Origin: Macrostomum lignano
Taxonomy: Eukaryota
NCBI GenBank assembly: GCA_002269645.1
Contig: NIVC01000298.1
Span: forward strand, 142,971-206,970
Reading direction: 5' to 3'
Length of the DNA stretch: 64,000 nucleotides
Under the pieces are notes generated by a model. That model was not told the DNA's origin. It did not search any database and saw nothing but the letters and a program-made list of their open reading frames with translations. A program made the position numbers and the translations under genes. Of the stretch, positions 41,105 through 64,000 are shown in pieces; the stretch's first letter is position 1; the number at the start of each line of letters is the position of its first letter.

Positions 41105-41147
41105 AACACAGACAGACACACAGACAGACAGACAGACAAACAGAAAC

Positions 41148-41184
<37 letters not shown>

Positions 41185-41223
41185 AACACAGACAGACACA
41201 CAGACAGACAGACAAACAGAAAC

Positions 41224-41264
<41 letters not shown>

Positions 41265-41267
41265 AAC

Positions 41268-41302
<35 letters not shown>

Positions 41303-41351
41303 CACAGACAGACAGACAGACACACAGACAGACAGACAGACAAACAGAAAC

Positions 41352-41384
<33 letters not shown>

Positions 41385-41447
41385 AACACAGACAGACAGA
41401 TAGACAGACAGACAGACACACAGACAGACAGACAGACAAACAGAAAC

Positions 41448-41484
<37 letters not shown>

Positions 41485-41487
41485 AAC

Positions 41488-41524
<37 letters not shown>

Positions 41525-41587
41525 AACACAGACAGACACACAGACAGACAGACAGACACACAGACAGACAGACAGACAAACAGAAAC

Positions 41588-41618
<31 letters not shown>

Positions 41619-41743
41619 CACAGACAGACAGACAGACACACAGACAGACAGACAGACAAACAGAAACACAGACAGACAGACAGACAGACACACAGACAGA
41701 CAGACAGACAGACACACAGACAGACAGACAGACAAACAGAAAC

Positions 41744-41780
<37 letters not shown>

Positions 41781-41903
41781 AACACAGACAGACACACAGA
41801 CAGACAGACAGACAAACAGAAACACAGACAGACACACAGACAGACAGACAGACAAACAGAAACACAGACAGACACACAGACAGACAGACAGACAAACAGA
41901 AAC

Positions 41904-41948
<45 letters not shown>

Positions 41949-42055
41949 AACACAGACAGACACACAGACAGACAGACAGACAAACAGAAACACAGACAGA
42001 CACACAGACAGACAGACAGACAAACAGAAACACAGACAGACACACAGACAGACAC
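39687..42055. repeat. 2.4-kb GACA-based array with CAAACAGAAACA higher-order units
   Basis: Directly visible; same unit type as 31147-31817. Confidence 0.97.
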
Positions 42056-42095: not shown

Positions 42096-42617
42096 ATGGT
42101 AAAGGCAATTCAGTTGCTCGCTATATTTATTCTGGTGCTGCCCATGCCGGCAGATCCCCTGCCTGCCTGTCCGCCTGGCAAATATCGCCACCCTGGAGCC
42201 AACGATTGCAGGCTCTGTCCGAGCCTTTCACAGTGCCGCTCTGACGAAGCCTGGGCAGCCAGGTGCGAGTGGCAGTCGATTAAGTCGGCTTGCTCGCAAT
42301 TTTGGGGAAATAATCAGCCGCCTAATCCCGCTGAGAATGCGCCAGGTAACGGCTCTGACACCAGTGGCGTTGCTGTGAGCAATAGTTCTAGCGACTTCAG
42401 TGCTACTACTAAACCATCAAATGAAGGTGCGGCTGGCAAAGTAGATCCTTGGCCAATTGTCTGGATTTTAGGTGTACTTTTATTGGTCTGCTTGATCGTT
42501 ATTGTCGTGGTACCCTGTGTTATTAGAGGCGAAAACTCTGTATGCCAGCTGCTGACGGATGACAACCCGACTGGACCCACAGATGCCGAAGATGCTGTCT
42601 ATAATGATGGGGATTAA
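42096..42617 (+). CDS. TNFR-like paralog (type A, stalk Y, shortened T1 tail)
   Basis: Ectodomain nearly identical to 31850; intact TM WPIVWILGVLLLVCLIVIVVVPCVI; tail about 22 aa shorter than the 31850 fossil tail. Confidence 0.88.
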   Translation: MVKAIQLLAIFILVLPMPADPLPACPPGKYRHPGANDCRLCPSLSQCRSDEAWAARCEWQSIKSACSQFWGNNQPPNPAENAPGNGSDTSGVAVSNSSSDFSATTKPSNEGAAGKVDPWPIVWILGVLLLVCLIVIVVVPCVIRGENSVCQLLTDDNPTGPTDAEDAVYNDGD

Positions 42618-43501
42618 TCTCCATCTAACTGACTTTGACTGCGACTGCCAAGCATTTTATCAATTGCTTATTATTCATGCAACTTAATACTCATTATTTA
42701 ACTTGTGTATCCTAGTATATATTTATAATTGTTTTTTTGCAATTATGGATTCCATGCTTGCAATTTTCCGCTAGTTTCACTACTAGTATTATGGCTATTT
42801 TAGTTATTATTATTGCTTGAAATTTTCTGATCTTTTTGTCACTGCTAGTAAAGGAAAATTTTTTAATTGTAGAATTTCTGTCATTATTTTTCACGGATGT
42901 TCTTATGCGTGACTACTATATAGCATTGTTGTTTCTCTGATTGTTTTTGACTCATTGGAACCAACAGATTCGTACACATAATGCATTCCATAAGGCATTT
43001 TTGCGTCTTATTGGCACTATTTTTGCGCTCATTTAATCTTATATTTATATATTTGTATTTTTTAGTAGCTTTCAATACCAAGGACAACTTAAGTATTGTC
43101 CCCTTGCAATACAAATATATATATATTACCAGTAAGTAGTCCTTGTTTCAATATTGCTTGCACATCCACAATTTGTTATCCAGCTAAAGCTAGACAGCTG
43201 TCTTTCCTACAAAACTGTGGGCTACACATAATTACTCATTTTAGCCTTTTTTGCAATTGTGCGTTTGTTTTAAATAACTAAGCTTTACAACTCTTGATAA
43301 ATTCCGACTTGTATTTGATTTTATGATTAGAAAGATTTATCACAATTTTGCTTTTATCACAATATTTAGCGATAATAAAAAAACGTTTTGATAAAGTGGA
43401 TTGTTAATCTATGCCCTTAGACACTAAGCAGAATAGAATGGATTGCTAATCTATACCCTCATAATTTTCAGTTACTTTTACCAATCATGCAAAAATTTCA
43501 G

Positions 43502-44119
43502 ATGTCGTCGATAAAAATTATCCAGTCATTTATAGTGTTGACAGGAGTGCCGTGTCTCACCGCCGCGCTGCCGTCAATCAGCTGCCCAATGGGCACCTAT
43601 CATAACAAAGAGGCGACCGGTAAATGCGATAAATGCCCAACCTGGCAGCAGTGCATCGGCACAGATAAAGTTTGGCGAGCTCAATGTGAGCAAGAGATTA
43701 TTAAATCTGGCTGTCAGGAATACTGGGAGCAAACTCGAGATGCTGAGACAACTTTATCGTCTTATAATTTCAACAGTAGCGCCAAGCTGGCTGGCAATGG
43801 CTCTGATATGAACACAAGTGCTACCTATGATTGTAACTGCGAACATGTTCTGTCATGTCAGATTGGCATAGCCATTCTTGCGCCGCTTGCCCTCATCGGG
43901 TTATTTGTTTCATTGCATAAAATTTATGAATATGTTTGCAATACCGGTAGAATGAAGAACGAACCGAAAGCTACGTGTACGCCAAATATGGAAAATGGCA
44001 ATCGTGACGACACAAAAGGGCTGGTCATGCAGGAGCTGCCGTCAGCAAATTCTGGTGAAAGTGGCGGCGCTCGACGTCGTAAAAAGAACAAGGTACGTAG
44101 ATATTTGTTTGTTATATAA
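43502..44119 (+). CDS. TNFR-like paralog (type B, stalk X, TM/tail T2); may splice at 44092
   Basis: TTTCAG-ATG; C-x13-C-x2-C-x5-C-x10-C-x8-C; TM QIGIAILAPLALIGLFVSL; AAG|GTACGT donor at 44093. Confidence 0.87.
   Translation: MSSIKIIQSFIVLTGVPCLTAALPSISCPMGTYHNKEATGKCDKCPTWQQCIGTDKVWRAQCEQEIIKSGCQEYWEQTRDAETTLSSYNFNSSAKLAGNGSDMNTSATYDCNCEHVLSCQIGIAILAPLALIGLFVSLHKIYEYVCNTGRMKNEPKATCTPNMENGNRDDTKGLVMQELPSANSGESGGARRRKKNKVRRYLFVI

Positions 44120-46096: not shown

Positions 46097-46173
<77 letters not shown>
46097..46173. repeat. (GACA)n
   Basis: Directly visible. Confidence 0.95.
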
Positions 46174-46364: not shown

Positions 46365-47610
46365 GGCGCCAAAATGAGTGCCTGTCTGCGGCGCCACAAT
46401 GAGCGCCTGTCTGCGGCGCCAAAATGAGTGCCTGTCTGCGGCGCCACAATGAGCGCCTGTCTGCGGCGCCAAAATGAGTGCCTGTCTGCGGCGCCACAAT
46501 GAGCGCCTGTCTGCGGCGCCAAAATGAGTGCCTGTCTGCGGCGCCACAATGAGCGCCTGTCTGCGGCGCCAAAATGAGCGCCTGTCTGCGGCGCCAAAAT
46601 GAGTGCCTGTCTGCGGCGCCAAAATAAGTGCCTGTCTGCGGCGCCACAATGAGCGCCTGTCTGCGGCGCTAAAATGAGAGCCTGGCTGTGGCGCCAAAAT
46701 GAGAGCCTGGCTGTGGCGCCAAAATGAGCCCCTGTCTGTGGCGCCAAAATGAGAGCCTGGCTGTGGCGCCAAAATGAGCCCCTGTCTGTGGCGCCAAAAT
46801 GAGAGCCTGGCTGTGGCGCCAAAATAAGAGCCTGGCTGTGGCGCCAAAATAAGAGCCTGGCTGTGGCGCCAAAATGAGCTCCTGTCTGTGGCGCCAAAAT
46901 GAGAGCCTGGCTGTGGCGCCAAAATGAGCCCCTGTCTGTGGCGCCAAAATGAGAGCCTGGCTGTGGCGCCAAAATGAGCCCCTGTCTGTGGCGCCAAAAT
47001 GAGAGCCTGGCTGTGGCGCCAAAATAAGAGCCTGTCTTTGGCGCCAAAATGAGAGCCTGGCTGTGGCGCCAAAATGAGAGCCTGTCTGTGGCGCCAAAAT
47101 GAGAGCCTGGCTGTGGCGCCAAAATGAGCCCCTGTCTGTGGCGCCAAAATGAGAGCCTGGCTGTGGCGCCAAAATAAGAGCCTGTCTGTGGCGCCAAAAT
47201 GAGAGCCTGGCTGTGACGCCAAAATGAGCCCCTGTCTGTGGCGCCAAAATGAGAGCCTGGCTGCGGCGCCAAAATGAGCCCCTGTCTGTGGCGCCAAAAT
47301 GAGAGCCTGGCTGTGGCGCCAAAATGAGCCCCTGTCTGTGGCGCCAAAATGAGAGCCTGGCTGTGGCGCCAAAATAAGAGCCTGTCTGTGGCGCCAAAAT
47401 GAGAGCCTGGCTGTGGCGCCAAAATAAGAGCCTGTCTGTGGCGCCAAAATGAGAGCCTGGCTGTGGCGCCAAAATGAGCCCCTGTCTGTGGCGCCAAAAT
47501 GAGAGCCTGGCTGTGGCGCCAAAATAAGAGCCTGTCTGTGGCGCCAAAATGAGAGCCTGGCTGTGGCGCCAAAATAAGAGCCTGTCTGTGGCGCCAAAAT
47601 GAGTGCCTGG
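46365..47610. repeat. 25-bp satellite (GGCGCCAAAATGAG(A/T/C)GCCTG(G/T)CTG(T/C))n with alternating-dimer structure
   Basis: About 50 units in two sub-domains with different variants. Confidence 0.96.
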
Positions 47611-48069
47611 CTCCTGAATTTTTAGGATTCTCCTTTCGGTCTTTCTAAAGCAAGTGCCTCTCTACCATTTTTCGTGATATAATATATTATTCAATGCAGT
47701 AGTATAGCTAAATTTATTAATTCGTATTTTACATGTAATTCCTTGCCATTTGGAATTTTACCTTTGTCAAATTTCAAAAAGTTTATCTGCGACGTACACA
47801 CAGCATTGTGATTCTATAATTTTAACTGATAATTGCAGAAAAACCTGAATGCCAAAATTCTTACTGACATTTTTACTTTATTTGATTATTTATATTCTCG
47901 AACAAGATGTCTGTGATAATTTATAATCGCAAATAAAGGACTTGTCTCTGCTGACAGATCCAGTTCTTTGGTTATTGATTTTTCATTGCATGTAAAAGGA
48001 AAATAGAAAGTATCATTTGGAGTATGATATGATAAAGACGGGCACCAAGTCAGCCAAATACACAGAAAA

Positions 48070-48070
<1 letters not shown>

Positions 48071-48140
<70 letters not shown>

Positions 48141-48282
48141 CTAATACAGACAGGCAGACAGACAGACAGACAGAAAGACAGACAGGCAGACAGACAGACA
48201 GGCAGACAGACAGACACTAAGACAGGCAGAAAGACAGACGGACAGACAGGCAGACAGACAGACACACACACACACACACACA
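48071..48282. repeat. GACA/CA microsatellite
   Basis: Directly visible. Confidence 0.93.
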
Positions 48283-48899
48283 AACGTGCACGAGGCACTT
48301 ATTGGCCAAGTGTGCAAAAACTTGCACATATTGGGACTGCTCCGACACACGAAAAATCACACACACACACGTCCCCACACAGGCAATTTTCAACCCACCA
48401 AATAGATTTTTATTGACAACATGCTTTTGGCTTACTGAAAACAGTTGGAAAGCATTTTTCGAGGTGCATTGAACTCACAACAGATTGTACATGTATACTT
48501 GTCTAAAACAGAATTTAAAAACCCTGGTGTCTTGCTGAATTCCACTAAGGCAATAATATCAGCGCGTCAAATTTCACCAGATAATTTCAGCGATCATAGA
48601 TTATAGAAGACAGGATGGTAAATGGCAAGGGACTTTAAGGTTATCGAAGACAAACGACATTGACACATATCAAAAAAATTTTACGATCTGAATAAACAAA
48701 ATTTGCTACATTTAGTGCCACTGGGAAAAAACAATTCTGTAGCGAAACTCCACTGTTCATAAAAATGTACTTTATTGATTATGACACAATCACTAGAATT
48801 ACTCAAAAGGTACATGTCAGCTATTCGGACCCACAGAATGCTACGTAAAAGGATGCGGAAATGAACCACACTATAGCAGAAGCCAGCACACACTATAGT

Positions 48900-49765
48900 A
48901 TGGGGCTGTCCCAACAATTCCACCATAGCCAGTGTGGATAGGGCTGTCCCAACAATTCCACCATAGCCAGTGTGGATAGGGCTGTCCCAACAATTCCAGC
49001 ATAGCCAGTGTGGATGGGGCTGTCCCAACAATTCCAGCATAGCCAGTGTGGATGGGGCTGTCCCAACAATTCCACCATAGCCAGTGTGGATAGGGCTGTC
49101 CCAACAATTCCAGCATAGCCAGTGTGGATGGGGCTGTCCCAACAATTCCAGCATAGCCAGTGTGGATAGGGCTGTCCCAACAATTCCACCATAGCCAGTG
49201 TGGATAGGGCTGTCCCAACAATTCCACCATAGCCAGTGTGGATAGGGCTGTCCCAACAATTCCACCATAGCCAGTGTGGATGGGGCTGTCCCAACAATTC
49301 CAGCATAGCCAGTGTGGATGGGGCTGTCCCAACAATTCCACCATAGCCAGTGTGGATGGGGCTGTCCCAACAATTCCAGCATAGCCAGTGTGGATGGGGC
49401 TGTCCCAACAATTCCACCATAGCCAGTGTGGATGGGGCTGTCCCAACAATTCCAGCATAGCCAGTGTGGATGGGGCTGTCCCAACAATTCCAGCATAGCC
49501 AGTGTGGATGGGGCTGTCCCAACAATTCCAGCATAGCCAGTGTGGATGGGGCTGTCCCAACAATTCCACCATAGCCAGTGTGGATGGGGCTGTCCCAACA
49601 ATTCCAGCATAGCCAGTGTGGATGGGGCTGTCCCAACAATTCCAGCATAGCCAGTGTGGATGGGGCTGTCCCAACAATTCCACCATAGCCAGTGTGGATG
49701 GGGCTGTCCCAACAATTCCACCATAGCCAGTGTGGATGGGGCTGTCCCAACAATTCCAGCATAGC
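48900..49765. repeat. 38-bp satellite (TGTCCCAACAATTCCA(G/C)CATAGCCAGTGTGGAT(G/A)GGGC)n
   Basis: About 23 units with a period of 38. Confidence 0.96.
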
Positions 49766-49916
49766 TTGAAAAAGAATATACACAAATACTATAAAAAGCA
49801 AATGCTAGAGCTCTACCGCGGTCATTGCACCGGATTTTATTAGAAAAAGACTGCAAAAAATGCGTCTTCTAAATAATATTCCAGTGAAGCACACAACAGT
49901 TAATCGGCTTCTCGAT

Positions 49917-52900
49917 TCAGAAAATTAAAAAAATAACCAGCTCCGCCAGAAAACTCATGAAATAACTGACTGCTGCACAGTTAGCGGCTGCTGCTGCTGC
50001 TGCTGCTGCTGCTGATGCTGCTGCAGCTTGGCAGCAGCAAGTGAACCAAATGACGGATGCAGCGGCGAGATCAGAATGCTCGCTGCTGATCGTTAAAGCG
50101 TATTCTTGTCTCTTAGGCATGTCGCTGGCGTGGCTGACTTCAGAATCTGCGAGGAAAAGAAATCAATTAAGATAGGCTTGCTTTAGTAATCATTAATAGG
50201 CTATAAAGGAACCCTTTAATAGAACGTGTTCAACTAATGCTGGGTCTGTTTTGAAAAGTCAGAACTCAGAAGTAGTCGCGATTAGAATCAGTATTGTCCC
50301 AATAAGTGCGACCCAACAAATGCTGTTCAAAAAATAGGCCTGGCTGCAATGTCCCAATAAATGCCCAACAAATTACTAGCCTTTAGCTAGGCTGGGCTGT
50401 GTTTACTATTCATTGCGTTTGTAGCTTGTGTCCCAACAATGCCACTGAGATTGTTGCATTGCTTTTGAATTGTGCTCTACCAAGTAACACAAGTACTCTG
50501 GTGTACAATACTTCTACAGCAGATAATACTCACCCAAAACAGATCGTCTCTTTCTCTTTAATCCTGTGCCGGACGGGTTTTCTTCAGATCCACCAGAAAA
50601 TTCACAAATAGACTGACTGCCTGCACGGATAGCGGCTGCTGCTGCTGCTGCTGCTGCGGCTTGTGAGCAGCAAGTGAACCAAATGACGGATGCAGCGGCG
50701 AGATCAGAATGCTCGCTGCTGATCGTTAAAGCGTATTCTTGTCTCTTAGGCATGTCGCTGGCGTGGCTGACTTCAGAATCTGCGAGGAAAAGAAATCAAT
50801 TAAGATAGGCTTGCTTTAGTAATCATTAATAGGCTATAAAGGAACCCTTTAATAGAACGTGTTCAACTAATGCTGGGTCTGTTTTGAAAAGTCAGAACTC
50901 AGAAGTAGTCGCGATTAGAATCAGTATTGTCCCAATAAGTGCGACCCAACAAATGCTGTTCAAAAAATAGGCCTGGCTGCAATGTCCCAATAAATGCCCA
51001 ACAAATTACTAGCCTTTAGCTAGGCTGGGCTGTGTTTACTATTCATTGCGTTTGTAGCTTGTGTCCCAACAATGCCACTGAGATTGTTGCATTGCTTTTG
51101 AATTGTGCTCTACCAAGTAACACAAGTACTCTGGTGTACAATACTTCTACAGCAGATAATACTCACCCAAAACAGATCGTCTCTTTCTCTTTAATCCTGT
51201 GCCGGACGGGTTTTCTTCAGATCCACCAGAAAATTCACAAATAGACTGACTGCCTGCACGGATAGCGGCTGCTGCTGCTGCTGCTGCTGCTGCTGCGGCT
51301 TGTGAGCAGCAAGTGAACCAAATGACGGATGCAGCGGCGAGATCAGAATGCTCGCTGCTGATCGTTAAAGCGTATTCTTGTCTCTTAGGCATGTCGCTGG
51401 CGTGGCTGACTTCAGAATCTGCGAGGAAAAGAAATCAATTAAGATAGGCTTGCTTTAGTAATCATTAATAGGCTATAAAGGAACCCTTTAATAGAACGTG
51501 TTCAACTAATGCTGGGTCTGTTTTGAAAAGTCAGAACTCAGAAGTAGTCGCGATTAGAATCAGTATTGTCCCAATAAGTGCGACCCAACAAATGCTGTTC
51601 AAAAAATAGGCCTGGCTGCAATGTCCCAATAAATGCCCAACAAATTACTAGCCTTGAGCTAGGCTGGGCTGTGTTTACTATTCATTGCGTTTGTAGCTTG
51701 TGTCCCAACAATGCCACTGAGATTGTTGCATTGCTTTTGAATTGTGCTCTACCAGGTAACACAAGTACTCTGGTGTACAATACTTCTACAGCAGATAATA
51801 CTCACCCAAAACAGATCGTCTCTTTCTCTTTAATCCTGTGCCGGACGGGTTTTCTTCAGATCCACCAGAAAATTCACAAATAGACTGACTGCCTGCACGG
51901 ATAGCGGCTGCTGCTGCTGATGCTGCTGCGGCTTGTGAGCAGCAAGTGAACCAAATGACGGATGCAGCGGCGAGATCAGAATGCTCGCTGCTGATCGTTA
52001 AAGCGCATTCTTGTCTCTTAGGCATGTCGCTGGCGTGGCTGACTTCAGAATCTGCGAGGAAAAGAAATCAATTAAGATAGGCTTGCTTTAGTAATCATTA
52101 ATAGGCTATAAAGGAACCCTTTAATAGAACGTGTTCAACTAATGCTGGGTCTGTTTTGAAAAGTCAGAACTCAGAAGTAGTCGCGATTAGAATCAGTATT
52201 GTCCCAATAAGTGCGACCCAACAAATGCTGTTCAAAAAATAGGCCTGGCTGCAATGTCCCAATAAATGCCCAACAAATTACTAGCCTTTAGCTAGGCTGG
52301 GCTGTGTTTACTATTCATTGCGTTTGTAGCTTGTGTCCCAACAATGCCACTGAGATTGTTGCATTGCTTTTGAATTGTGCTCTACCAAGTAACACAAGTA
52401 CTCTGGTGTACAATACTTCTACAGCAGATAATACTCACCCAAAACAGATCGTCTCTTTCTCTTTAATCCTGTGCCGGACGGGTTTTCTTCAGATCCACCA
52501 GAAAATTCACAAATAGACTGACTGCCTGCACGGATAGCGGCTGCTGCTGCTGATGCTGCTGCGGCTTGTGAGCAGCAAGTGAACCAAATGACGGATGCAG
52601 CGGCGAGATCAGAATGCTCGCTGCTGATCGTTAAAGCGCATTCTTGTCTCTTAGGCATGTCGCTGGCGTGGCTGACTTCAGAATCTGCGAGGAAAAGAAA
52701 TCAATTAAGATAGGCTTGCTTTAGTAATCATTAATAGGCTATAAAGGAACCCTTTAATAGAACGTGTTCAACTAATGCTGGGTCTGTTTTGAAAAGTCAG
52801 AACTCAGAAGTAGTCGCGATTAGAATCAGTATTGTCCCAATAAGTGCGACCCAACAAATGCTGTTCAAAAAATAGGCCTGGCTGCAATGTCCCAATAAAT

Positions 52901-55074
52901 GCCCAACAAATTACTAGCCTTGAGCTAGGCTGGGCTGTGTTTACTATTCATTGCGTTTGTAGCTTGTGTCCCAACAATGCCACTGAGATTGTTGCATTGC
53001 TTTTGAATTGTGCTCTACCAGGTAACACAAGTACTCTGGTGTACAATACTTCTACAGCAGATAATACTCACCCAAAACAGATCGTCTCTTTCTCTTTAAT
53101 CCTGTGCCGGACGGGTTTTCTTCAGATCCACCAGAAAATTCACAAATAGACTGACTGCCTGCACGGATAGCGGCTGCTGCTGCTGCTGCTGCTGCGGCTT
53201 GTGAGCAGCAAGTGAACCAAATGACGGATGCAGCGGCGAGATCAGAATGCTCGCTGCTGATCGTTAAAGCGCATTCTTGTCTCTTAGGCATGTCGCTGGC
53301 GTGGCTGACTTCAGAATCTGCGAGGAAAAGAAATCAATTAAGATAGGCTTGCTTTAGTAATCATTAATAGGCTATAAAGGAACCCTTTAATAGAACGTGT
53401 TCAACTAATGCTGGGTCTGTTTTGAAAAGTCAGAACTCAGAAGTAGTCGCGATTAGAATCAGTATTGTCCCAATAAGTGCGACCCAACAAATGCTGTTCA
53501 AAAAATAGGCCTGGCTGCAATGTCCCAATAAATGCCCAACAAATTACTAGCCTTGAGCTAGGCTGGGCTGTGTTTACTATTCATTGCGTTTGTAGCTTGT
53601 GTCCCAACAATGCCACTGAGATTGTTGCATTGCTTTTGAATTGTGCTCTACCAAGTAACACAAGTACTCTGGTGTACAATACTTCTACAGCAGATAATAC
53701 TCACCCAAAACAGATCGTCTCTTTCTCTTTAATCCTGTGCCGGACGGGTTTTCTTCAGATCCACCAGAAAATTCACAAATAGACTGACTGCCTGCACGGA
53801 TAGCGGCTGCTGCTGCTGCTGCTGCTGCTGCTGCGGCTTGTGAGCAGCAAGTGAACCAAATGACGGATGCAGCGGCGAGATCAGAATGCTCGCTGCTGAT
53901 CGTTAAAGCGCATTCTTGTCTCTTAGGCATGTCGCTGGCGTGGCTGACTTCAGAATCTGCGAGGAAAAGAAATCAATTAAGATAGGCTTGCTTTAGTAAT
54001 CATTAATAGGCTATAAAGGAACCCTTTAATAGAACGTGTTCAACTAATGCTGGGTCTGTTTTGAAAAGTCAGAACTCAGAAGTAGTCGCGATTAGAATCA
54101 GTATTGTCCCAATAAGTGCGACCCAACAAATGCTGTTCAAAAAATAGGCCTGGCTGCAATGTCCCAATAAATGCCCAACAAATTACTAGCCTTGAGCTAG
54201 GCTGGGCTGTGTTTACTATTCATTGCGTTTGTAGCTTGTGTCCCAACAATGCCACTGAGATTGTTGCATTGCTTTTGAATTGTGCTCTACCAGTAACACA
54301 AGTACTCTGGTGTACAATACTTCTACAGCAGATAATACTCACCCAAAACAGATCGTCTCTTTCTCTTTAATCCTGTGCCGGACGGGTTTTCTTCAGATCC
54401 ACCAGAAAATTCACAAATAGACTGACTGCCTGCACGGATAGCGGCTGCTGCTGCTGCTGCTGCTGCGGCTTGTGAGCAGCAAGTGAACAAATGACGGATG
54501 CAGCGGCGAGATCAGAATGCTCGCTGCTGATCGTTAAAGCGCATTCTTGTCTCTTAGGCATGTCGCTGGCGTGGCTGACTTCAGAATCTGCGAGGAAAAG
54601 AAATCAATTAAGATAGGCTTGCTTTAGTAATCATTAATAGGCTATAAAGGAACCCTTTAATAGAACGTGTTCAACTAATGCTGGGTCTGTTTTGAAAAGT
54701 CAGAACTCAGAAGTAGTCGCGATTAGAATCAGTATTGTCCCAATAAGTGCGACCCAACAAATGCTGTTCAAAAAATAGGCCTGGCTGCAATGTCCCAATA
54801 AATGCCCAACAAATTACTAGCCTTGAGCTAGGCTGGGCTGTGTTTACTATTCATTGCGTTTGTAGCTTGTGTCCCAACAATGCCACTGAGATTGTTGCAT
54901 TGCTTTTGAATTGTGCTCTACCAAGTAACACAAGTACTCTGGTGTACAATACTTCTACAGCAGATAATACTCACCCAAAACAGATCGTCTCTTTCTCTTT
55001 AATCCTGTGCCGGACGGGTTTTCTTCAGATCCACCAGAAAATTCACAAATAGACTGACTGCCTGCACGGATAGC

Positions 55075-55107
<33 letters not shown>

Positions 55108-55716
55108 GGCTTGTGAGCAGCAAGTGAACCAAATGACGGATGCAGCGGCGAGATCAGAATGCTCGCTGCTGATCGTTAAAGCGCATTCTTGTCTCTTAGG
55201 CATGTCGCTGGCGTGGCTGACTTCAGAATCTGCGAGGAAAAGAAATCAATTAAGATAGGCTTGCTTTAGTAATCATTAATAGGCTATAAAGGAACCCTTT
55301 AATAGAACGTGTTCAACTAATGCTGGGTCTGTTTTGAAAAGTCAGAACTCAGAAGTAGTCGCGATTAGAATCAGTATTGTCCCAATAAGTGCGACCCAAC
55401 AAATGCTGTTCAAAAAATAGGCCTGGCTGCAATGTCCCAATAAATGCCCAACAAATTACTAGCCTTGAGCTAGGCTGGGCTGTGTTTACTATTCATTGCG
55501 TTTGTAGCTTGTGTCCCAACAATGCCACTGAGATTGTTGCATTGCTTTTGAATTGTGCTCTACCAAGTAACACAAGTACTCTGGTGTACAATACTTCTAC
55601 AGCAGATAATACTCACCCAAAACAGATCGTCTCTTTCTCTTTAATCCTGTGCCGGACGGGTTTTCTTCAGATCCACCAGAAAATTCACAAATAGACTGAC
55701 TGCCTGCACGGATAGC

Positions 55717-55802
<86 letters not shown>

Positions 55803-58800
55803 GTGAGCAGCAAGTGAACCAAATGACGGATGCAGCGGCGAGATCAGAATGCTCGCTGCTGATCGTTAAAGCGCATTCTTGTCTCTTAGGCATGTCGCTG
55901 GCGTGGCTGACTTCAGAATCTGCGAGGAAAAGAAATCAATTAAGATAGGCTTGCTTTAGTAATCATTAATAGGCTATAAAGGAACCCTTTAATAGAACGT
56001 GTTCAACTAATGCTGGGTCTGTTTTGAAAAGTCAGAACTCAGAAGTAGTCGCGATTAGAATCAGTATTGTCCCAATAAGTGCGACCCAACAAATGCTGTT
56101 CAAAAAATAGGCCTGGCTGCAATGTCCCAATAAATGCCCAACAAATTACTAGCCTTGAGCTAGGCTGGGCTGTGTTTACTATTCATTGCGTTTGTAGCTT
56201 GTGTCCCAACAATGCCACTGAGATTGTTGCATTGCTTTTGAATTGTGCTCTACCAAGTAACACAAGTACTCTGGTGTACAATACTTCTACAGCAGATAAT
56301 ACTCACCCAAAACAGATCGTCTCTTTCTCTTTAATCCTGTGCCGGACGGGTTTTCTTCAGATCCACCAGAAAATTCACAAATAGACTGACTGCCTGCACG
56401 GATAGCGGCTGCTGCTGCTGCTGCTGCTGCTGCTGCGGCTTGTGAGCAGCAAGTGAACCAAATGACGGATGCAGCGGCGAGATCAGAATGCTCGCTGCTG
56501 ATCGTTAAAGCGCATTCTTGTCTCTTAGGCATGTCGCTGGCGTGGCTGACTTCAGAATCTGCGAGGAAAAGAAATCAATTAAGATAGGCTTGCTTTAGTA
56601 ATCATTAATAGGCTATAAAGGAACCCTTTAATAGAACGTGTTCAACTAATGCTGGGTCTGTTTTGAAAAGTCAGAACTCAGAAGTAGTCGCGATTAGAAT
56701 CAGTATTGTCCCAATAAGTGCGACCCAACAAATGCTGTTCAAAAAATAGGCCTGGCTGCAATGTCCCAATAAATGCCCAACAAATTACTAGCCTTGAGCT
56801 AGGCTGGGCTGTGTTTACTATTCATTGCGTTTGTAGCTTGTGTCCCAACAATGCCACTGAGATTGTTGCATTGCTTTTGAATTGTGCTCTACCAAGTAAC
56901 ACAAGTACTCTGGTGTACAATACTTCTACAGCAGATAATACTCACCCAAAACAGATCGTCTCTTTCTCTTTAATCCTGTGCCGGACGGGTTTTCTTCAGA
57001 TCCACCAGAAAATTCACAAATAGACTGACTGCCTGCACGGATAGCGGCTGCTGCTGCTGCTGCTGCTGCTGCTGCGGCTTGTGAGCAGCAAGTGAACCAA
57101 ATGACGGATGCAGCGGCGAGATCAGAATGCTCGCTGCTGATCGTTAAAGCGCATTCTTGTCTCTTAGGCATGTCGCTGGCGTGGCTGACTTCAGAATCTG
57201 CGAGGAAAAGAAATCAATTAAGATAGGCTTGCTTTAGTAATCATTAATAGGCTATAAAGGAACCCTTTAATAGAACGTGTTCAACTAATGCTGGGTCTGT
57301 TTTGAAAAGTCAGAACTCAGAAGTAGTCGCGATTAGAATCAGTATTGTCCCAATAAGTGCGACCCAACAAATGCTGTTCAAAAAATAGGCCTGGCTGCAA
57401 TGTCCCAATAAATGCCCAACAAATTACTAGCCTTGAGCTAGGCTGGGCTGTGTTTACTATTCATTGCGTTTGTAGCTTGTGTCCCAACAATGCCACTGAG
57501 ATTGTTGCATTGCTTTTGAATTGTGCTCTACCAAGTAACACAAGTACTCTGGTGTACAATACTTCTACAGCAGATAATACTCACCCAAAACAGATCGTCT
57601 CTTTCTCTTTAATCCTGTGCCGGACGGGTTTTCTTCAGATCCACCAGAAAATTCACAAATAGACTGACTGCCTGCACGGATAGCGGCTGCTGCTGCTGCT
57701 GCTGCTGCGGCTTGTGAGCAGCAAGTGAACCAAATGACGGATGCAGCGGCGAGATCAGAATGCTCGCTGCTGATCGTTAAAGCGCATTCTTGTCTCTTAG
57801 GCATGTCGCTGGCGTGGCTGACTTCAGAATCTGCGAGGAAAAGAAATCAATTAAGATAGGCTTGCTTTAGTAATCATTAATAGGCTATAAAGGAACCCTT
57901 TAATAGAACGTGTTCAACTAATGCTGGGTCTGTTTTGAAAAGTCAGAACTCAGAAGTAGTCGCGATTAGAATCAGTATTGTCCCAATAAGTGCGACCCAA
58001 CAAATGCTGTTCAAAAAATAGGCCTGGCTGCAATGTCCCAATAAATGCCCAACAAATTACTAGCCTTGAGCTAGGCTGGGCTGTGTTTACTATTCATTGC
58101 GTTTGTAGCTTGTGTCCCAACAATGCCACTGAGATTGTTGCATTGCTTTTGAATTGTGCTCTACCAAGTAACACAAGTACTCTGGTGTACAATACTTCTA
58201 CAGCAGATAATACTCACCCAAAACAGATCGTCTCTTTCTCTTTAATCCTGTGCCGGACGGGTTTTCTTCAGATCCACCAGAAAATTCACAAATAGACTGA
58301 CTGCCTGCACGGATAGCGGCTGCTGCTGCTGTGCTGCTGCGGCTTGTGAGCAGCAAGTGAACCAAATGACGGATGCAGCGGCGAGATCAGAATGCTCGCT
58401 GCTGATCGTTAAAGCGCATTCTTGTCTCTTAGGCATGTCGCTGGCGTGGCTGACTTCAGAATCTGCGAGGAAAAGAAATCAATTAAGATAGGCTTGCTTT
58501 AGTAATCATTAATAGGCTATAAAGGAACCCTTTAATAGAACGTGTTCAACTAATGCTGGGTCTGTTTTGAAAAGTCAGAACTCAGAAGTAGTCGCGATTA
58601 GAATCAGTATTGTCCCAATAAGTGCGACCCAACAAATGCTGTTCAAAAAATAGGCCTGGCTGCAATGTCCCAATAAATGCCCAACAAATTACTAGCCTTG
58701 AGCTAGGCTGGGCTGTGTTTACTATTCATTGCGTTTGTAGCTTGTGTCCCAACAATGCCACTGAGATTGTTGCATTGCTTTTGAATTGTGCTCTACCAAG

Positions 58801-59588
58801 TAACACAAGTACTCTGGTGTACAATACTTCTACAGCAGATAATACTCACCCAAAACAGATCGTCTCTTTCTCTTTAATCCTGTGCCGGACGGGTTTTCTT
58901 CAGATCCACCAGAAAATTCACAAATAGACTGACTGCCTGCACGGATAGCGGCTGCTGCTGCTGCTGCTGCTGCTGCTGCGGCTTGTGAGCAGCAAGTGAA
59001 CCAAATGACGGATGCAGCGGCGAGATCAGAATGCTCGCTGCTGATCGTTAAAGCGCATTCTTGTCTCTTAGGCATGTCGCTGGCGTGGCTGACTTCAGAA
59101 TCTGCGAGGAAAAGAAATCAATTAAGATAGGCTTGCTTTAGTAATCATTAATAGGCTATAAAGGAACCCTTTAATAGAACGTGTTCAACTAATGCTGGGT
59201 CTGTTTTGAAAAGTCAGAACTCAGAAGTAGTCGCGATTAGAATCAGTATTGTCCCAATAAGTGCGACCCAACAAATGCTGTTCAAAAAATAGGCCTGGCT
59301 GCAATGTCCCAATAAATGCCCAACAAATTACTAGCCTTGAGCTAGGCTGGGCTGTGTTTACTATTCATTGCGTTTGTAGCTTGTGTCCCAACAATGCCAC
59401 TGAGATTGTTGCATTGCTTTTGAATTGTGCTCTACCAAGTAACACAAGTACTCTGGTGTACAATACTTCTACAGCAGATAATACTCACCCAAAACAGATC
59501 GTCTCTTTCTCTTTAATCCTGTGCCGGACGGGTTTTCTTCAGATCCACCAGAAAATTCACAAATAGACTGACTGCCTGCACGGATAGC

Positions 59589-59627
<39 letters not shown>

Positions 59628-60864
59628 GGCTTGTGAGCAGCAAGTGAACCAAATGACGGATGCAGCGGCGAGATCAGAATGCTCGCTGCTGATCGTTAAA
59701 GCGCATTCTTGTCTCTTAGGCATGTCGCTGGCGTGGCTGACTTCAGAATCTGCGAGGAAAAGAAATCAATTAAGATAGGCTTGCTTTAGTAATCATTAAT
59801 AGGCTATAAAGGAACCCTTTAATAGAACGTGTTCAACTAATGCTGGGTCTGTTTTGAAAAGTCAGAACTCAGAAGTAGTCGCGATTAGAATCAGTATTGT
59901 CCCAATAAGTGCGACCCAACAAATGCTGTTCAAAAAATAGGCCTGGCTGCAATGTCCCAATAAATGCCCAACAAATTACTAGCCTTGAGCTAGGCTGGGC
60001 TGTGTTTACTATTCATTGCGTTTGTAGCTTGTGTCCCAACAATGCCACTGAGATTGTTGCATTGCTTTTGAATTGTGCTCTACCAAGTAACACAAGTACT
60101 CTGGTGTACAATACTTCTACAGCAGATAATACTCACCCAAAACAGATCGTCTCTTTCTCTTTAATCCTGTGCCGGACGGGTTTTCTTCAGATCCACCAGA
60201 AAATTCACAAATAGACTGACTGCCTGCACGGATAGCGGCTGCTGCTGTGCTGCTGCGGCTTGTGAGCAGCAAGTGAACCAAATGACGGATGCAGCGGCGA
60301 GATCAGAATGCTCGCTGCTGATCGTTAAAGCGCATTCTTGTCTCTTAGGCATGTCGCTGGCGTGGCTGACTTCAGAATCTGCGAGGAAAAGAAATCAATT
60401 AAGATAGGCTTGCTTAGTAATCATTAATAGGCTATAAAGGAACCCTTTAATAGAACGTGTTCAACTAATGCTGGGTCTGTTTTGAAAAGTCAGAACTCAG
60501 AAGTAGTCGCGATTAGAATCAGTATTGTCCCAATAAGTGCGACCCAACAAATGCTGTTCAAAAAATAGGCCTGGCTGCAATGTCCCAATAAATGCCCAAC
60601 AAATTACTAGCCTTGAGCTAGGCTGGGCTGTGTTTACTATTCATTGCGTTTGTAGCTTGTGTCCCAACAATGCCACTGAGATTGTTGCATTGCTTTTGAA
60701 TTGTGCTCTACCAAGTAACACAAGTACTCTGGTGTACAATACTTCTACAGCAGATAATACTCACCCAAAACAGATCGTCTCTTTCTCTTTAATCCTGTGC
60801 CGGACGGGTTTTCTTCAGATCCACCAGAAAATTCACAAATAGACTGACTGCCTGCACGGATAGC

Positions 60865-60900
<36 letters not shown>

Positions 60901-62139
60901 GGCTTGTGAGCAGCAAGTGAACCAAATGACGGATGCAGCGGCGAGATCAGAATGCTCGCTGCTGATCGTTAAAGCGCATTCTTGTCTCTTAGGCATGTCG
61001 CTGGCGTGGCTGACTTCAGAATCTGCGAGGAAAAGAAATCAATTAAGATAGGCTTGCTTTAGTAATCATTAATAGGCTATAAAGGAACCCTTTAATAGAA
61101 CGTGTTCAACTAATGCTGGGTCTGTTTTGAAAAGTCAGAACTCAGAAGTAGTCGCGATTAGAATCAGTATTGTCCCAATAAGTGCGACCCAACAAATGCT
61201 GTTCAAAAAATAGGCCTGGCTGCAATGTCCCAATAAATGCCCAACAAATTACTAGCCTTGAGCTAGGCTGGGCTGTGTTTACTATTCATTGCGTTTGTAG
61301 CTTGTGTCCCAACAATGCCACTGAGATTGTTGCATTGCTTTTGAATTGCTGCTCTACCAAGTAACACAAGTACTCTGGTGTACAATACTTCTACAGCAGA
61401 TAATACTCACCCAAAACAGATCGTCTCTTTCTCTTTAATCCTGTGCCGGACGGGTTTTCTTCAGATCCACCAGAAAATTCACAAATAGACTGACTGCCTG
61501 CACGGATAGCTGCTGCTGCTGCTGCTGCTGCGGCTTGTGAGCAGCAAGTGAACCAAATGACGGATGCAGCGGCGAGATCAGAATGCTCGCTGCTGATCGT
61601 TAAAGCGCATTCTTGTCTCTTAGGCATGTCGCTGGCGTGGCTGACTTCAGAATCTGCGAGGAAAAGAAATCAATTAAGATAGGCTTGCTTTAGTAATCAT
61701 TAATAGGCTATAAAGGAACCCTTTAATAGAACGTGTTCAACTAATGCTGGGTCTGTTTTGAAAAGTCAGAACTCAGAAGTAGTCGCGATTAGAATCAGTA
61801 TTGTCCCAATAAGTGCGACCCAACAAATGCTGTTCAAAAAATAGGCCTGGCTGCAATGTCCCAATAAATGCCCAACAAATTACTAGCCTTGAGCTAGCTG
61901 GGCTGTGTTTACTATTCATTGCGTTTGTAGCTTGTGTCCCAACAATGCCACTGAGATTGTTGCATTGCTTTTGAATTGTGCTCTACCAAGTAACACAAGT
62001 ACTCTGGTGTACAATACTTCTACAGCAGATAATACTCACCCAAAACAGATCGTCTCTTTCTCTTTAATCCTGTGCCGGACGGGTTTTCTTCAGATCCACC
62101 AGAAAATTCACAAATAGACTGACTGCCTGCACGGATACT

Positions 62140-62175
<36 letters not shown>

Positions 62176-62787
62176 GGCTTGTGAGCAGCAAGTGAACCAA
62201 ATGACGGATGCAGCGGCGAGATCAGAATGCTCGCTGCTGATCGTTAAAGCGCATTCTTGTCTCTTAGGCATGTCGCTGGCGTGGCTGACTTCAGAATCTG
62301 CGAGGAAAAGAAATCAATTAAGATAGGCTTGCCTTTAGTAATCATTAATAGGCTATAAAGGAACCCTTTAATAGAACGTGTTCAACTAATGCTGGCGTCT
62401 GTTTTGAAAAGTCAGAACTCAGAAGTAGTCGCGATTAGAATCAGTATTGTCCCAATAAAGTGCGACCCAACAAATGCTGTTCAAAAAATAGGCCTGGCTG
62501 CAATGTCCCAATAAATGCCCAACAAATTACTAGCCTTGAGCTAGCTGGGCTGTGTTTACTATTCATTGCGTTTGTAGCTTGTGTCCCAACAATGCCACTG
62601 ATTGTTGCATTGCTTTTGAATTGTGCTCTACCAAGTAACACAAGTACTCTGGTGTACAATACTTCTACAGCAGATAATACTCACCCAAAACAGATCGTCT
62701 CTTTCTCTTTAATCCTGTGCCGCGACGGGTTTTCTTCAGATCCACCAGAAAATTCACAAATAGACTGACTGCCTGCACGGATAGCGG

Positions 62788-62819
<32 letters not shown>

Positions 62820-64000
62820 GCTTGTGAGCAGCAAGTGAACCAAATGACGGATGCAGCGGCGAGATCAGAATGCTCGCTGCTGATCGTTAAAGCGCATTCT
62901 TGTCTCTTAGGCATGTCGCTGGCGTTGGCTGACTTCAGAATCTGCGAGGAAAAGAAATCAATTAAGATAGGCTTGCCTTTAGTAATCATTAATAGGCTAT
63001 AAAGGAACCTTTAATAGAACGTGTTCAACTAATGCTGGGTCTGTTTTGAAAAGTCAGAACTCAGAAGTAGTCGCGATTAGAATCAGTATTGTCCCAATAA
63101 GTGCGACCCAACAAATGCTGTTCAAAAAATAGGCCTGGCTGCAATGTCCCAATAAATGCCCAACAAATTACTAGCCTTGAGCTAGCTGGGCTGTGTTTAC
63201 TATTCATTGCGTTTGTAGCTTGTGTCCCAACAATGCCACTGAGATTGTTGCATTGCTTTTGAATTGTGCTCTACCAAGTAACACAAGTACTCTGGTGTAC
63301 AATACTTCTACAGCAGATAATACTCACCCAAAACAGATCGTCTCTTTCTCTTTAATCCTGTGCCGGACGGGTTTTCTTCAGATCCACCAGAAAATTCACA
63401 AATAGACTGACTGCCTGCACGGATAGCTGCGCGCTGCTGCTGCTGCTGCTGCTGCTGCGGCTTGTGAGCAGCAAGTGAACAAATGACGGATGCAGCGGCG
63501 AGATCAGAATGCTCGCTGCTGATCGTTAAAGCGCATTCTTGTCTCTTAGGCATGTCGCTGGCGTGGCTGACTTCAGAATCTGCGAGGAAAAGAAATCAAT
63601 TAAGATAGGCTTGCCTTTAGTAATCATTAATAGGCTATAAAGGAACCCTTTAATAGAACGTGTTCAACTAATGCTGGGTCTGTTTTGAAAAGTCAGAACT
63701 CAGAAGTAGTCGCGATTAGAATCAGTATTGTCCCAATAAGTGCGACCCAACAAATGCTGTTCAAAAAAATAGGCCTGGCTGCAATGTCCCAATAAATGCC
63801 CAACAAATTACTAGCCTTGAGCTGGCTGGCTGTGTTTACTATTCATTGCGTTTGTAGCTTGTGTCCCAACAATGCCACTGAGATTGTTGCATTGCTTTTG
63901 AATTGTGCTCTACCAAGTAACACAAGTACTCTGGTGTACAATACTTCTACAGCAGATAATACTCACCCAAAACAGATCGTCTCTTTCTCTTTAATCCTGT
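49917..64000 (-). CDS. Putative multi-exon gene: 21 full tandem ~246-nt poly-Ala exons, one partial exon, and a terminal exon (50146-49917); 5' end outside the window
   Basis: Each unit has TTTCTTTTCCTCGCAG|AT...TTG G|GTGAGT, e.g. exon 50779-50534 (246 nt, phase 1/1) with a 387-nt intron. Only the poly-Ala frame is open across the exon. The terminal copy ends with a stop at 49917 and AATAAA at 49841-49836. No transcript evidence. Confidence 0.55.
49985..64000. repeat. ~630-690-bp tandem array (about 22 units), each with a variable (CTG)n tract
   Basis: The period is visible in the sequence and in the repeated ORF track; the array runs off the window end. Confidence 0.98.

What the first reader, a model, noticed from the sequence alone, without database searches (positions are those of the whole stretch)
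50534..64000. The 635-bp satellite is built from a splice-bounded, in-frame exon: possible amplified exon array
Seen: on the minus strand each unit has a polypyrimidine acceptor (TTTCTTTTCCTCGCAG) and a consensus donor (G|GTGAGT) enclosing about 246 nt. The exon begins with 2 nt and ends with 1 nt, so neighbours would join as GAT (Asp). The joined frame reads DSEVSHASDMPKRQECALTISSEHSDLAAASVIWFTCCSQ(A)nIRAGSQSICEFSGGSEENPSGTGLKRKRRSVL without a stop; the poly-Gln and poly-Ser frames are closed by stops. There are 21 complete units and 16 appear frame-intact. Inference: either a repeat protein of more than 1,300 aa or a cassette of selectable exons hidden in what repeat maskers would discard. 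Caveat: phase symmetry follows automatically once a real intron is duplicated, so it supports a gene origin but not current use.
Basis: partly seen in the sequence, partly recalled or inferred. Interest (0 to 1): 0.85.

Follow-up and report, generated by a model that had tools for sequence, protein, structure and literature searches.

The report
Tandemly amplified spliced exon–intron cassette
The 635-bp "satellite" in this Macrostomum lignano (flatworm) window is a real exon plus its intron, copied at least 22 times at the 3' end of a species-only orphan gene; public RNA-based gene models splice it as predicted, but its reading frame is often broken and shows no selection, so a giant repeat protein is unlikely.

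Summary
On the minus strand there are 22 exact acceptors and 22 exact donors. They bound 21 complete exon-like segments of 242-303 nt, separated by 387-nt introns. Seventeen segments are frame-intact and four are frameshifted with stops. The finding's coordinates miss a 22nd, terminal exon (50146 down to 49917) with a stop codon and an AATAAA signal.

All protein hits are from Macrostomum lignano. Three paralogous arrays in the GenBank Mlig_3_7 assembly have 7, 10 and at least 16 units. They share the same 5' half-exon and 3' terminal exon, so this is one duplicated locus, not a dispersed satellite. GenBank gene models there come from stranded RNA-seq, and they remove exactly the predicted 387-nt introns (RSVL|DSEVSH junction).

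The coding reading is weak:
- The longest spliced open frame in the window is 628 codons, not more than 1,300.
- One paralog carries an in-frame TAG in 11 of 15 units.
- The exon is no more conserved than its intron.
- Clean exon substitutions are 8 nonsynonymous to 2 synonymous.
- The three terminal exons end in three different peptides.
- Intact exons differ almost only in poly-Ala length, so a cassette of selectable exons would add no diversity.

Best reading: an exon-intron repeat made by unequal crossing-over, transcribed and spliced, probably not encoding a conserved protein.

The parts
50147..64000 (-). Tandem array of the ~635-bp exon+intron cassette: 21 complete units plus a partial exon at the window edge. 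It continues beyond the window.
63967..64000 (-). 3' end of a further exon, cut by the window edge and ending at a donor.
50534..50779 (-). Representative intact internal exon, 246 nt, phase 1-1. It reads DSEVSHASDMPKRQEYALTISSEHSDLAAASVIWFTCCSQ(A)10IRAGSQSICEFSGGSEENPSGTGLKRKRRSVL.
50147..50533 (-). Representative 387-nt intron, from GTGAGT to TTTCTTTTCCTCGCAG. It holds three copies of the motif TGTCCCAAYAA (written on the + strand), which it shares with the adjacent 38-bp minisatellite.
49917..50146 (-). Terminal exon, coding part. It matches the internal units up to the poly-Ala tract, then diverges to ...NCAAVSYFMSFLAELVIFLIF* with the stop at 49919-49917.
49836..49841 (-). AATAAA polyadenylation signal, about 75 nt downstream of the stop. 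It is conserved in paralogs L001 and L002.
62685..62941 (-). Broken exon, 257 nt, with an early frameshift and several stops.
60137..60378 (-). Broken exon, 242 nt, with a frameshift inside the (GCA)n tract and a stop.
58218..58462 (-). Broken exon, 245 nt, with a frameshift inside the (GCA)n tract and a stop.
54343..54587 (-). Broken exon, 245 nt, with a 1-nt deletion before the (GCA)n tract and a stop.
63328..63579 (-). Exon with two compensating frameshifts. Its internal segment reads CSLAAHKPQQQQQQQQRA.
55617..55919 (-). Longest exon, 303 nt. Its (GCT)28 microsatellite gives a 29-Ala run.
48900..49765 (.). 38-bp minisatellite, 22.8 copies, directly 3' of the terminal exon. The same flank follows the array in paralogs L001 and L002.

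Best explanation
This is an intragenic repeat whose unit is a complete internal exon plus its 387-nt intron. It lies at the 3' end of a Macrostomum lignano-specific orphan transcription unit on the minus strand.

Locus structure:
- a first half-exon with its own acceptor (...CCCACGCACAG|GTTCATCC...), seen only in the paralogs because it lies outside the window
- N identical internal exons
- a diverged terminal exon with a stop codon and AATAAA

Origin (inferred). The first exon, the internal exons and the terminal exon share a ~150-nt core that contains a (GCA)n microsatellite. [quoted passage not shown] Repeated rounds, with homogenisation, would give arrays of 7, 10, at least 16 and at least 22 units in the paralogous copies of the locus.

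Expression. Splicing of neighbouring units is supported indirectly, by public RNA-seq-derived models at paralogous arrays. No reads were examined for this window.

Coding status (inferred). The open frame is a legacy that is not being maintained. Frameshifts, mostly at the microsatellite, and a nonsense codon spread freely through arrays. The product is most likely a repetitive spliced RNA with only short, variable ORFs, in other words a neutral or non-coding by-product rather than a conserved repeat protein.
For: Exon reality:
- Exact consensus sites are present in all units.
- They match the M. lignano cis-splice motifs GT[G/A]AG and CAG (PMC8629364).
- Such an acceptor-donor-ORF combination is absent from 99 kb of control sequence.

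Splicing:
- GenBank models P0004, P0001 and P0003 at paralogous arrays remove exactly the 387-nt introns.
- That annotation is RNA-seq-based and strand-specific.

One locus, duplicated:
- L001, L002 and L003 share the same 5' edge, and L001 and L002 share the 3' edge (L003 runs off its contig at the 3' end). The window shares the 3' edge.
- The flanks differ by 1.2-3.3% between copies.

Unequal-crossover origin:
- The three-way alignment of first, internal and terminal exons shows the shared core.

No protein constraint:
- Intact units number 17/21 in the window, 8/9 in L001, 5/6 in L002 and 3/15 in L003. In L003 a TGG-to-TAG change sits in 11 units.
- Variable columns are 16/225 in the exon against 15/387 in the intron.
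- Clean exon substitutions are 8 nonsynonymous, including 1 nonsense, against 2 synonymous.
- Non-3n indels occur at a similar density in exon and intron.
- The three terminal exons give three different C-termini.
- No homolog exists outside M. lignano among 5.8 billion clusters and 1.84 billion representatives, apart from one non-significant PKD look-alike.
- There is no Pfam domain.
Against: - The frame is open in most units, and the exon has the 1-1 phase typical of coding modules.
- A 51%-identical diverged copy of the exon (P0033, UniProt A0A1I8FV09) keeps the same frame and an identical GLKRKRRSVL end. That could reflect constraint.
- Substitution counts are small, about 10 events, so neutrality is not proven.
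- The splicing evidence comes from multi-mapping short reads at paralogous arrays, not from this window.
- TransDecoder did call ORFs in the transcripts.
Confidence: 0.6

Rival explanations
1. It is a functional repeat-protein or polyprotein gene. Each exon would encode an ~82-aa module ending in a multibasic KRKRR site. The protein, or peptides cleaved from it, would be used, and copy number would tune dosage. Broken units would be skipped, or would belong to decaying paralogs.
For: - One frame is open in 33 of 51 units across four arrays.
- The exon is phase 1-1.
- KRKRR sits at every unit end.
- The diverged copy P0033 conserves GLKRKRRSVL 10/10 while the rest is about 45% diverged.
- UniProt models that start at the internal Met are auto-named 'Secreted protein'.
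- The longest spliced ORF in the window still reaches 563 codons from an ATG.
Against: - A nonsense codon has been homogenised through L003.
- The exon is no more conserved than the intron, and substitutions are 8 nonsynonymous to 2 synonymous.
- The three paralogs have three different C-termini.
- The first half-exon has no ATG in the poly-Ala frame (read from the sequence).
- There is no domain, no homolog outside the species and no confident fold; mean pLDDT is 56.5.
Confidence: 0.2
2. It is a relic array. The exon structure is real, but this particular copy, and perhaps most copies, is transcriptionally silent. The annotated transcripts would come from one paralog, with multi-mapped reads painting the others.
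For: - STAR was run allowing up to 1000 multi-mappings.
- Array consensus sequences differ by only 0-1.3%, so short reads cannot be assigned to one array.
- No gene model from the window itself was returned.
Against: - Three separate contigs carry models whose locus-specific variants match their own DNA: the D/H type in L001, the A/N type in L002 and L003, and the L002-specific terminal peptide IRAGSQLIDEFSGRAGYFLSF in P0003.
- The splice sites, the AATAAA signal and the 3' flank of the window copy are intact.
Confidence: 0.15
3. It is an ordinary satellite that resembles an exon only by chance, and the gene models are annotation artefacts.
For: - One open frame in three occurs in 13% of shuffles.
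- The unit is invisible to TRF, whose longest period is 500, so it would have escaped repeat filtering.
- The older UniProt models jump between frames.
Against: - No comparable acceptor-donor-ORF combination occurs in 99 kb of control sequence.
- The models are RNA-derived and their spans fit the 387-nt introns exactly.
- The arrays sit at one duplicated locus with gene-like first and terminal exons and a poly(A) signal.
Confidence: 0.05

Closest known systems
Exon-containing coding repeats such as the human LPA kringle IV type 2 repeat (own knowledge)
   Same: The repeat unit carries complete exon(s) plus intron. It is phase-symmetric, so any copy number stays in frame. Copy number varies between copies of the locus, units are homogenised, and the likely origin is unequal crossing-over.
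   Different: LPA units encode a folded kringle domain that is translated. Here there is no recognisable domain, many units are frame-broken, there is no sign of purifying selection, and the unit is much smaller (635 bp with one exon).
NBPF / Olduvai (DUF1220) exon-doublet amplifications (own knowledge)
   Same: A lineage-specific, rapid tandem amplification of exon-intron modules inside a gene, with paralogous loci differing in copy number.
   Different: Olduvai modules are conserved protein domains with expression and selection evidence. This one is an orphan sequence limited to a single species in the databases searched.
Transcribed macrosatellites (DXZ4, D4Z4/DUX4) (own knowledge)
   Same: A locus-specific tandem array of large units that is transcribed, and an ORF can be read in the units.
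   Different: Those units are kilobases long and are not spliced unit-to-unit. Here each unit supplies an acceptor and a donor, so neighbouring units are joined in the RNA.
Multi-copy prohormone or neuropeptide precursors with dibasic cleavage sites (own knowledge)
   Same: A repeated peptide module ending in a multibasic site (KRKRR).
   Different: No signal peptide or 5' coding exon has been identified, the module is long (82 aa), there is no C-terminal Gly for amidation, and the frames are broken and unconstrained.
Mutually exclusive exon clusters (Dscam-type) (own knowledge)
   Same: A tandem series of homologous exons, each with its own splice sites.
   Different: Dscam exon variants differ in sequence and only one is chosen. 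Here the exons are essentially identical, and the available models splice consecutive units together.

Membership tests
Cis-spliced internal exon | Canonical acceptor (polypyrimidine tract + CAG) and donor (GTRAGT) on one strand, at exon-like spacing | tested here: met
   There are 22/22 exact sites. They match the M. lignano motifs GT[G/A]AG and CAG. No comparable pair with an open frame occurs in 99 kb of control sequence.
Cis-spliced internal exon | Transcripts that use the junctions | tested here: met
   The evidence is indirect. The spans of the RNA-seq-derived GenBank models P0004 and P0001 equal CDS length plus two 387-nt introns, and the proteins contain RSVL|DSEVSH or RSVL|ASEVSN. Reads themselves could not be inspected.
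Exon-intron cassette amplification (coding repeat type) | Unit = whole exon + whole intron, phase-symmetric | tested here: met
   Exon of 246 nt, phase 1-1, with a 387-nt intron.
Exon-intron cassette amplification (coding repeat type) | Copy number differs between copies of the same locus | tested here: met
   Arrays of 7, 10, at least 16 and at least 22 units lie between shared 5' and 3' edges; the window and L003 each show only one edge.
Exon-intron cassette amplification (coding repeat type) | Amplified module is a translated, constrained protein module | tested here: not met
   A nonsense codon sits in 11/15 L003 units. Exon variability is at least that of the intron. Substitutions are 8 nonsynonymous to 2 synonymous. 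C-termini vary between paralogs. The numbers are small.
Classical satellite DNA (dispersed or heterochromatic high-copy repeat) | Many arrays in unrelated genomic contexts | tested here: not met
   The three fetched arrays share one 5' edge, and L001, L002 and the window share one 3' edge; L003 and the window each run off the sequence at the other end. A genome-wide census was not possible.
Transposable element | Terminal repeats, target-site duplications or transposition proteins; insertion at different sites | tested here: not met
   The flanks are the same in all copies, and there is no TE domain in the unit.
Mutually exclusive exon cluster (Dscam-like) | Exon variants that differ in sequence, with one chosen per transcript | tested here: not met
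   The intact exons are identical apart from Ala-run length and one C/Y change. The models join adjacent units.
Prohormone polyprotein | N-terminal signal peptide upstream of the repeated peptides | not testable with these tools
   The 5' end lies outside the window. In the paralogs the first half-exon has no ATG in the poly-Ala frame and no upstream exon is annotated.
Prohormone polyprotein | Dibasic or multibasic sites flanking each repeated peptide | tested here: met
   KRKRR is present at the end of every intact unit.
PKD / Ig-like domain repeat | Significant match to a PKD profile | tested here: not met
   Pfam reports no PKD hit in either register. The hhalign probability is 18.9%. The phmmer hit to the PKD protein P0032 is inflated by repeat-on-repeat matching.

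The most novel reading that the evidence does not exclude
The array is a very young, species-specific gene in which each amplified exon adds one copy of a peptide released at the KRKRR sites. In this reading the internal Met plus the hydrophobic LAAASVIWFTCC(A)n stretch acts as a signal-like segment. Copy number, differing between the homeologous loci of this recently polyploid genome, would set the dose. That would be a de novo polyprotein caught during amplification. A variant reading: the SL trans-spliced leader, which ends in ATG, lands on the first half-exon and opens the poly-Gln frame, giving a ~55-aa peptide (MVHPHSNSPLHPSFGSLAAHKPQ(n)PLSVQAVSLFVNFLVDLKKTRPAQD*).
Probability: 0.12. Interest if true: 0.6.

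Novelty: new member of a known kind. Interest (0 to 1): 0.3.

Why it matters
Practical points:
- It shows that a repeat a masker would discard, or that TRF misses because the period exceeds 500 bp, can be a spliced exon array.
- It explains a cluster of odd 'hypothetical', 'Secreted', 'UCH domain' and 'Dymeclin' M. lignano proteins in UniProt and GenBank. They are fragments of one repetitive locus.

Biological points:
- It is a clean, very young example of exon-intron amplification by unequal crossing-over at a microsatellite-containing core.
- Four copy-number states are visible across the homeologous copies of a recent polyploid.
- It could serve for studying concerted evolution, or how spliced repetitive RNAs and possibly de novo proteins arise.
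- It does not by itself reveal a new mechanism or function.

Tried and rejected
1. Rfam scan of 48000-53000, both strands: only sub-threshold chance hits in the CTG run.
2. Pfam on two units and on a circularly permuted unit: nothing above cut-off.
3. PDB sequence search: only E>0.2 noise.
4. AlphaFold2 on two units without an alignment: mean pLDDT 56.5, uninformative. No fold search was run on it.
5. PKD-domain lead. The exhaustive phmmer search gave one non-flatworm hit, P0032, a 4xPKD protein, with E=5e-7 summed over 3 repeats. Pairwise identity is 30%. It was rejected because repeat-on-repeat matching inflates the score, the Pfam PKD profiles do not match, and the hhalign probability is 18.9%.
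6. The diverged exon copy P0033 (51% identity). Its locus could not be retrieved, it is absent from the fetched loci, and a second homology search returned only P0033 itself. No dN/dS could therefore be computed on a properly diverged pair.
7. Expression look-ups for Mlig029855, Mlig003618 and Mlig026960 in paper texts and in two sets of supplements: no occurrences.
8. Literature search for a described M. lignano satellite of this kind: none found.
9. Homology of the terminal flank to a whole unit beyond the core: the alignment is too weak to decide.
10. UniProt names such as 'UCH domain', 'Dymeclin', 'BAF250_C' and 'Rho-GAP' on 100-250-aa models made only of this repeat were treated as automatic mis-naming, not as evidence of a host gene.
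Full report
**What is in the sequence.** From about 49.9 kb to the window end there is a tandem array of 22 copies, spaced 629-690 bp, mostly 99-100% identical. TRF, limited to periods of 500 or less, reports only the embedded (GCT)n runs. On the minus strand TTTCTTTTCCTCGCAG occurs exactly 22 times and TTTTGG|GTGAGT exactly 22 times, and neither occurs on the plus strand. These sites bound 21 complete exon-like segments of 242-303 nt, separated by 387-nt introns. The exon is phase 1-1, so neighbours join as G|AT = Asp. The joined frame reads DSEVSHASDMPKRQECALTISSEHSDLAAASVIWFTCCSQ(A)nIRAGSQSICEFSGGSEENPSGTGLKRKRRSVL.

Seventeen exons are stop-free with a length divisible by 3. Sixteen of them are canonical and one has two compensating frameshifts. 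Four are frameshifted and run into stops. The other two frames are closed.

**Is it more than chance?** An open frame alone is weak evidence. It appears in 13% of dinucleotide-preserving shuffles for any frame, and in 4.5% for a given frame. In the 49.7-kb non-array part of the window, on both strands, only one strong acceptor-donor pair lies 100-400 nt apart, and none has an open frame. The full combination is therefore not a chance feature. The 22 repeats of it count as one observation, because the units are near-identical copies.

**What the finding missed.** A 22nd acceptor opens a terminal exon at 50146. It matches the unit up to the poly-Ala tract and then diverges. It reaches a stop at 49919-49917 and is followed by AATAAA at 49841-49836, then by a 38-bp minisatellite at 48900-49765. 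So the window holds the 3' end of a minus-strand gene. Its 5' end lies beyond position 64000.

**Organism and existing annotation.** All 29 protein hits are from the flatworm Macrostomum lignano. They are GenBank BOX15_Mlig... 'hypothetical proteins' and UniProt A0A1I8... entries at up to 100% identity. Several contain exactly the predicted junction RSVL|DSEVSHASDMPK, or the variant RSVL|ASEVSNASDMPK.

The GenBank annotation of assembly Mlig_3_7 was built from stranded RNA-seq with STAR, StringTie (--rf) and TACO, plus a de novo transcriptome. CDSs were called by TransDecoder, and weaker antisense transcripts were removed (PMC5730564).

I fetched the three GenBank loci. The model spans fit exactly. 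For P0004, 1197 nt minus two 387-nt introns equals 423 nt, or 141 codons. For P0001, 1341 nt minus 774 nt equals 567 nt, or 189 codons. The exon pieces start and end at the motif positions found. P0001's CDS ends where its third exon carries a TAG, so these CDSs are simply the longest ORFs in longer spliced transcripts. This is indirect but real evidence that the units are transcribed from the exon-sense strand and spliced to one another. The donor and acceptor also match the species' cis-splice motifs GT[G/A]AG and CAG (PMC8629364).

**One locus, several copies.** The three GenBank loci are:
- L001, from NIVC01000257, with 10 units
- L002, from NIVC01000487, with 7 units and both edges present
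- L003, from NIVC01001277, with at least 16 units, running to the contig end

All three share the same 5' edge. L001 and L002 share the same 3' edge, and the window shows that 3' edge too. L003 reaches the contig end and the window ends inside its array, so each of those two shows only one edge.
- The 5' edge is a first half-exon with its own acceptor, ...CCCACGCACAG|GTTCATCCGCATTCAAACTCGCCGCTGCATCC...
- The 3' edge is the terminal exon, AATAAA and the 38-bp minisatellite.

The flanks differ by 1.2-3.3% between copies. The array consensus sequences differ by 0-1.3%. This is therefore not a dispersed satellite or a transposable element. It is one locus present in several homeologous or segmental copies of this recently polyploid, highly redundant genome, with array sizes of 7, 10, at least 16 and at least 22 units.

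**How the array arose (inference).** The alignment of first, internal and terminal exons shows a shared core of about 150 nt that includes the (GCA)n tract.
- The first exon is a unique 5' end, the core, and a 3' part carrying the donor.
- The terminal exon is an acceptor with a 5' part, the core, and a unique 3' end.
- The internal exon is the terminal exon's 5' part, the core, and the first exon's 3' part.

That is the expected product of unequal crossing-over between two adjacent homologous exons. It duplicates the 3' part of exon 1, the intron, and the 5' part of exon 2. The microsatellite in the core is a plausible misalignment point, and it is also the main source of length variation and frameshifts. 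The intron carries three copies of TGTCCCAAYAA. That motif is otherwise found in the window only in the adjacent 38-bp minisatellite: 89 matches against 0.08 expected. Intron and 3' flank may therefore be related, but the alignment beyond the core is too weak to decide.

**Is it coding?** The evidence leans against a maintained protein.
- With every unit spliced, the window's transcript is cut into open stretches of 628, 565, 392 and 299 codons. The longest ORF from an ATG is 563 codons, not more than 1,300 aa.
- Across 51 units from four arrays, intact exons number 17/21 in the window, 8/9 in L001, 5/6 in L002 and 3/15 in L003. In L003 a TGG-to-TAG nonsense change has spread to 11 units.
- Substitution-variable columns are 16/225 in the exon outside the microsatellite, against 15/387 in the intron.
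- The unambiguous exon changes are 8 nonsynonymous, including the nonsense change, against 2 synonymous. That is close to the neutral expectation.
- Non-3n indels are about as frequent per site in the exon as in the intron.
- The terminal exons of the window, L001 and L002 end in three unrelated peptides...NCAAVSYFMSFLAELVIFLIF*...ICAAVS* and ...IRAGSQLIDEFSGRAGYFLSF*.
- There is no Pfam family, no PDB relative and no confident predicted fold.
- There is no homolog outside M. lignano in either large protein search.

The counts are small, so this shows 'no sign of constraint'. It is not proof of neutrality.

Two points favour the other side. The KRKRR multibasic site closes every unit. A 51%-identical diverged copy (P0033) keeps the frame and an identical GLKRKRRSVL. 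Its DNA could not be retrieved for a dN/dS test.

**The 'cassette of selectable exons' idea.** The intact exons encode the same peptide apart from the Ala-run length and one Cys/Tyr change. Choosing among them would generate almost no diversity. The available models also join consecutive units rather than selecting one.

**A lead that failed.** The exhaustive search returned one bacterial-type PKD-repeat protein, P0032, at 30% identity and E=5e-7. Both sequences are periodic, so the same weak similarity is counted several times. The PKD profiles do not match the unit in either register, and the profile-profile probability is 18.9%. I do not count it as homology.

**Context.** In L001 the array lies within the span of a 981-aa TIR_2-domain gene model on the opposite strand. 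The window differs from L001 by about 36 kb between the array's 3' flank and a 23-bp minisatellite. That stretch holds a tandem family of small Cys-motif transmembrane genes and long (GACA)n tracts.

**Verdict.** The more ambitious readings, a giant repeat protein or a selectable exon cassette, are not supported. This is a young exon-intron repeat in an orphan locus that public databases already carry as fragmentary hypothetical proteins. It is a new member of a known kind, of modest interest.

Noticed in passing
window 12802-13443, 15021-15941, 21348-21845, 24082-24969, 26838-27902, 29361-30455, 34471-35265, 42096-42617, 43487-44119 (+): A tandem family of at least 9 small single-pass membrane proteins on the + strand, with an N-terminal motif CPxGxY...C..CP....C. 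Pfam gives only sub-threshold Ephrin_rec_like and TNFR_c6 hits. In paralog L001 the region is spanned by a TIR_2-domain gene model.
   Followed up: partly
window 27177-27502 and 29888-30081: In-frame 21-bp minisatellites inside two of those membrane-protein ORFs. They encode ADKSAGT x15 and GSAGRPV x9, which are coding repeats in the ectodomain stalk.
   Followed up: no
window 48900-49765 and every 387-nt intron of the array: The 11-mer TGTCCCAAYAA occurs 89 times against 0.08 expected. It is found only in the 38-bp minisatellite (23 times) and three times in each intron, so intron and 3' flank may share ancestry.
   Followed up: partly
window 2173-3489 (-) and 3828-5054 (+): Fragments of an LTR retrotransposon in opposite orientations: an integrase (rve, Integrase_H2C2) and a gag/aspartic protease with a zinc knuckle.
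   Followed up: partly
window 17916-18488 (+): A 190-aa ORF with a weak FLYWCH zinc-finger match.
   Followed up: no
window 9380-9442: An interstitial telomere-type repeat, (CTAACC)n, which is (TTAGGG)n on the other strand.
   Followed up: no
window 20583-21294, 22983-23790, 31144-31819, 39687-42054, 46097-46173, 48062-48280: Very long (GACA)n/(AGAC)n tracts, up to 2.4 kb, interspersed between the membrane-protein genes.
   Followed up: no
window 10284-11248; L001 1-5100: A 23-bp minisatellite (TTCTATGATTTTTTACATGACGC) of about 1 kb in the window is more than 5 kb in paralog L001. L001 also lacks window 11832-48251. This is either large structural variation between copies or an assembly difference.
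   Followed up: partly
window 46365-47612: A 50-bp minisatellite of 25 copies at 95% identity, lying between the gene family and the array.
   Followed up: no
L001 8763-14768 and L002 7001-11120 (antisense to the exons): Each unit carries a 101-codon antisense ORF across the intron and the exon's 3' part. It has a GTG start only and no ATG, so it is probably meaningless.
   Followed up: no
protein P0033 (UniProt A0A1I8FV09), locus not retrieved: A 51%-identical diverged copy of the exon, spliced to a canonical ASEVSNASDMP exon, with GLKRKRRSVL fully conserved. An older unit therefore exists somewhere in the genome and would allow a proper selection test.
   Followed up: partly
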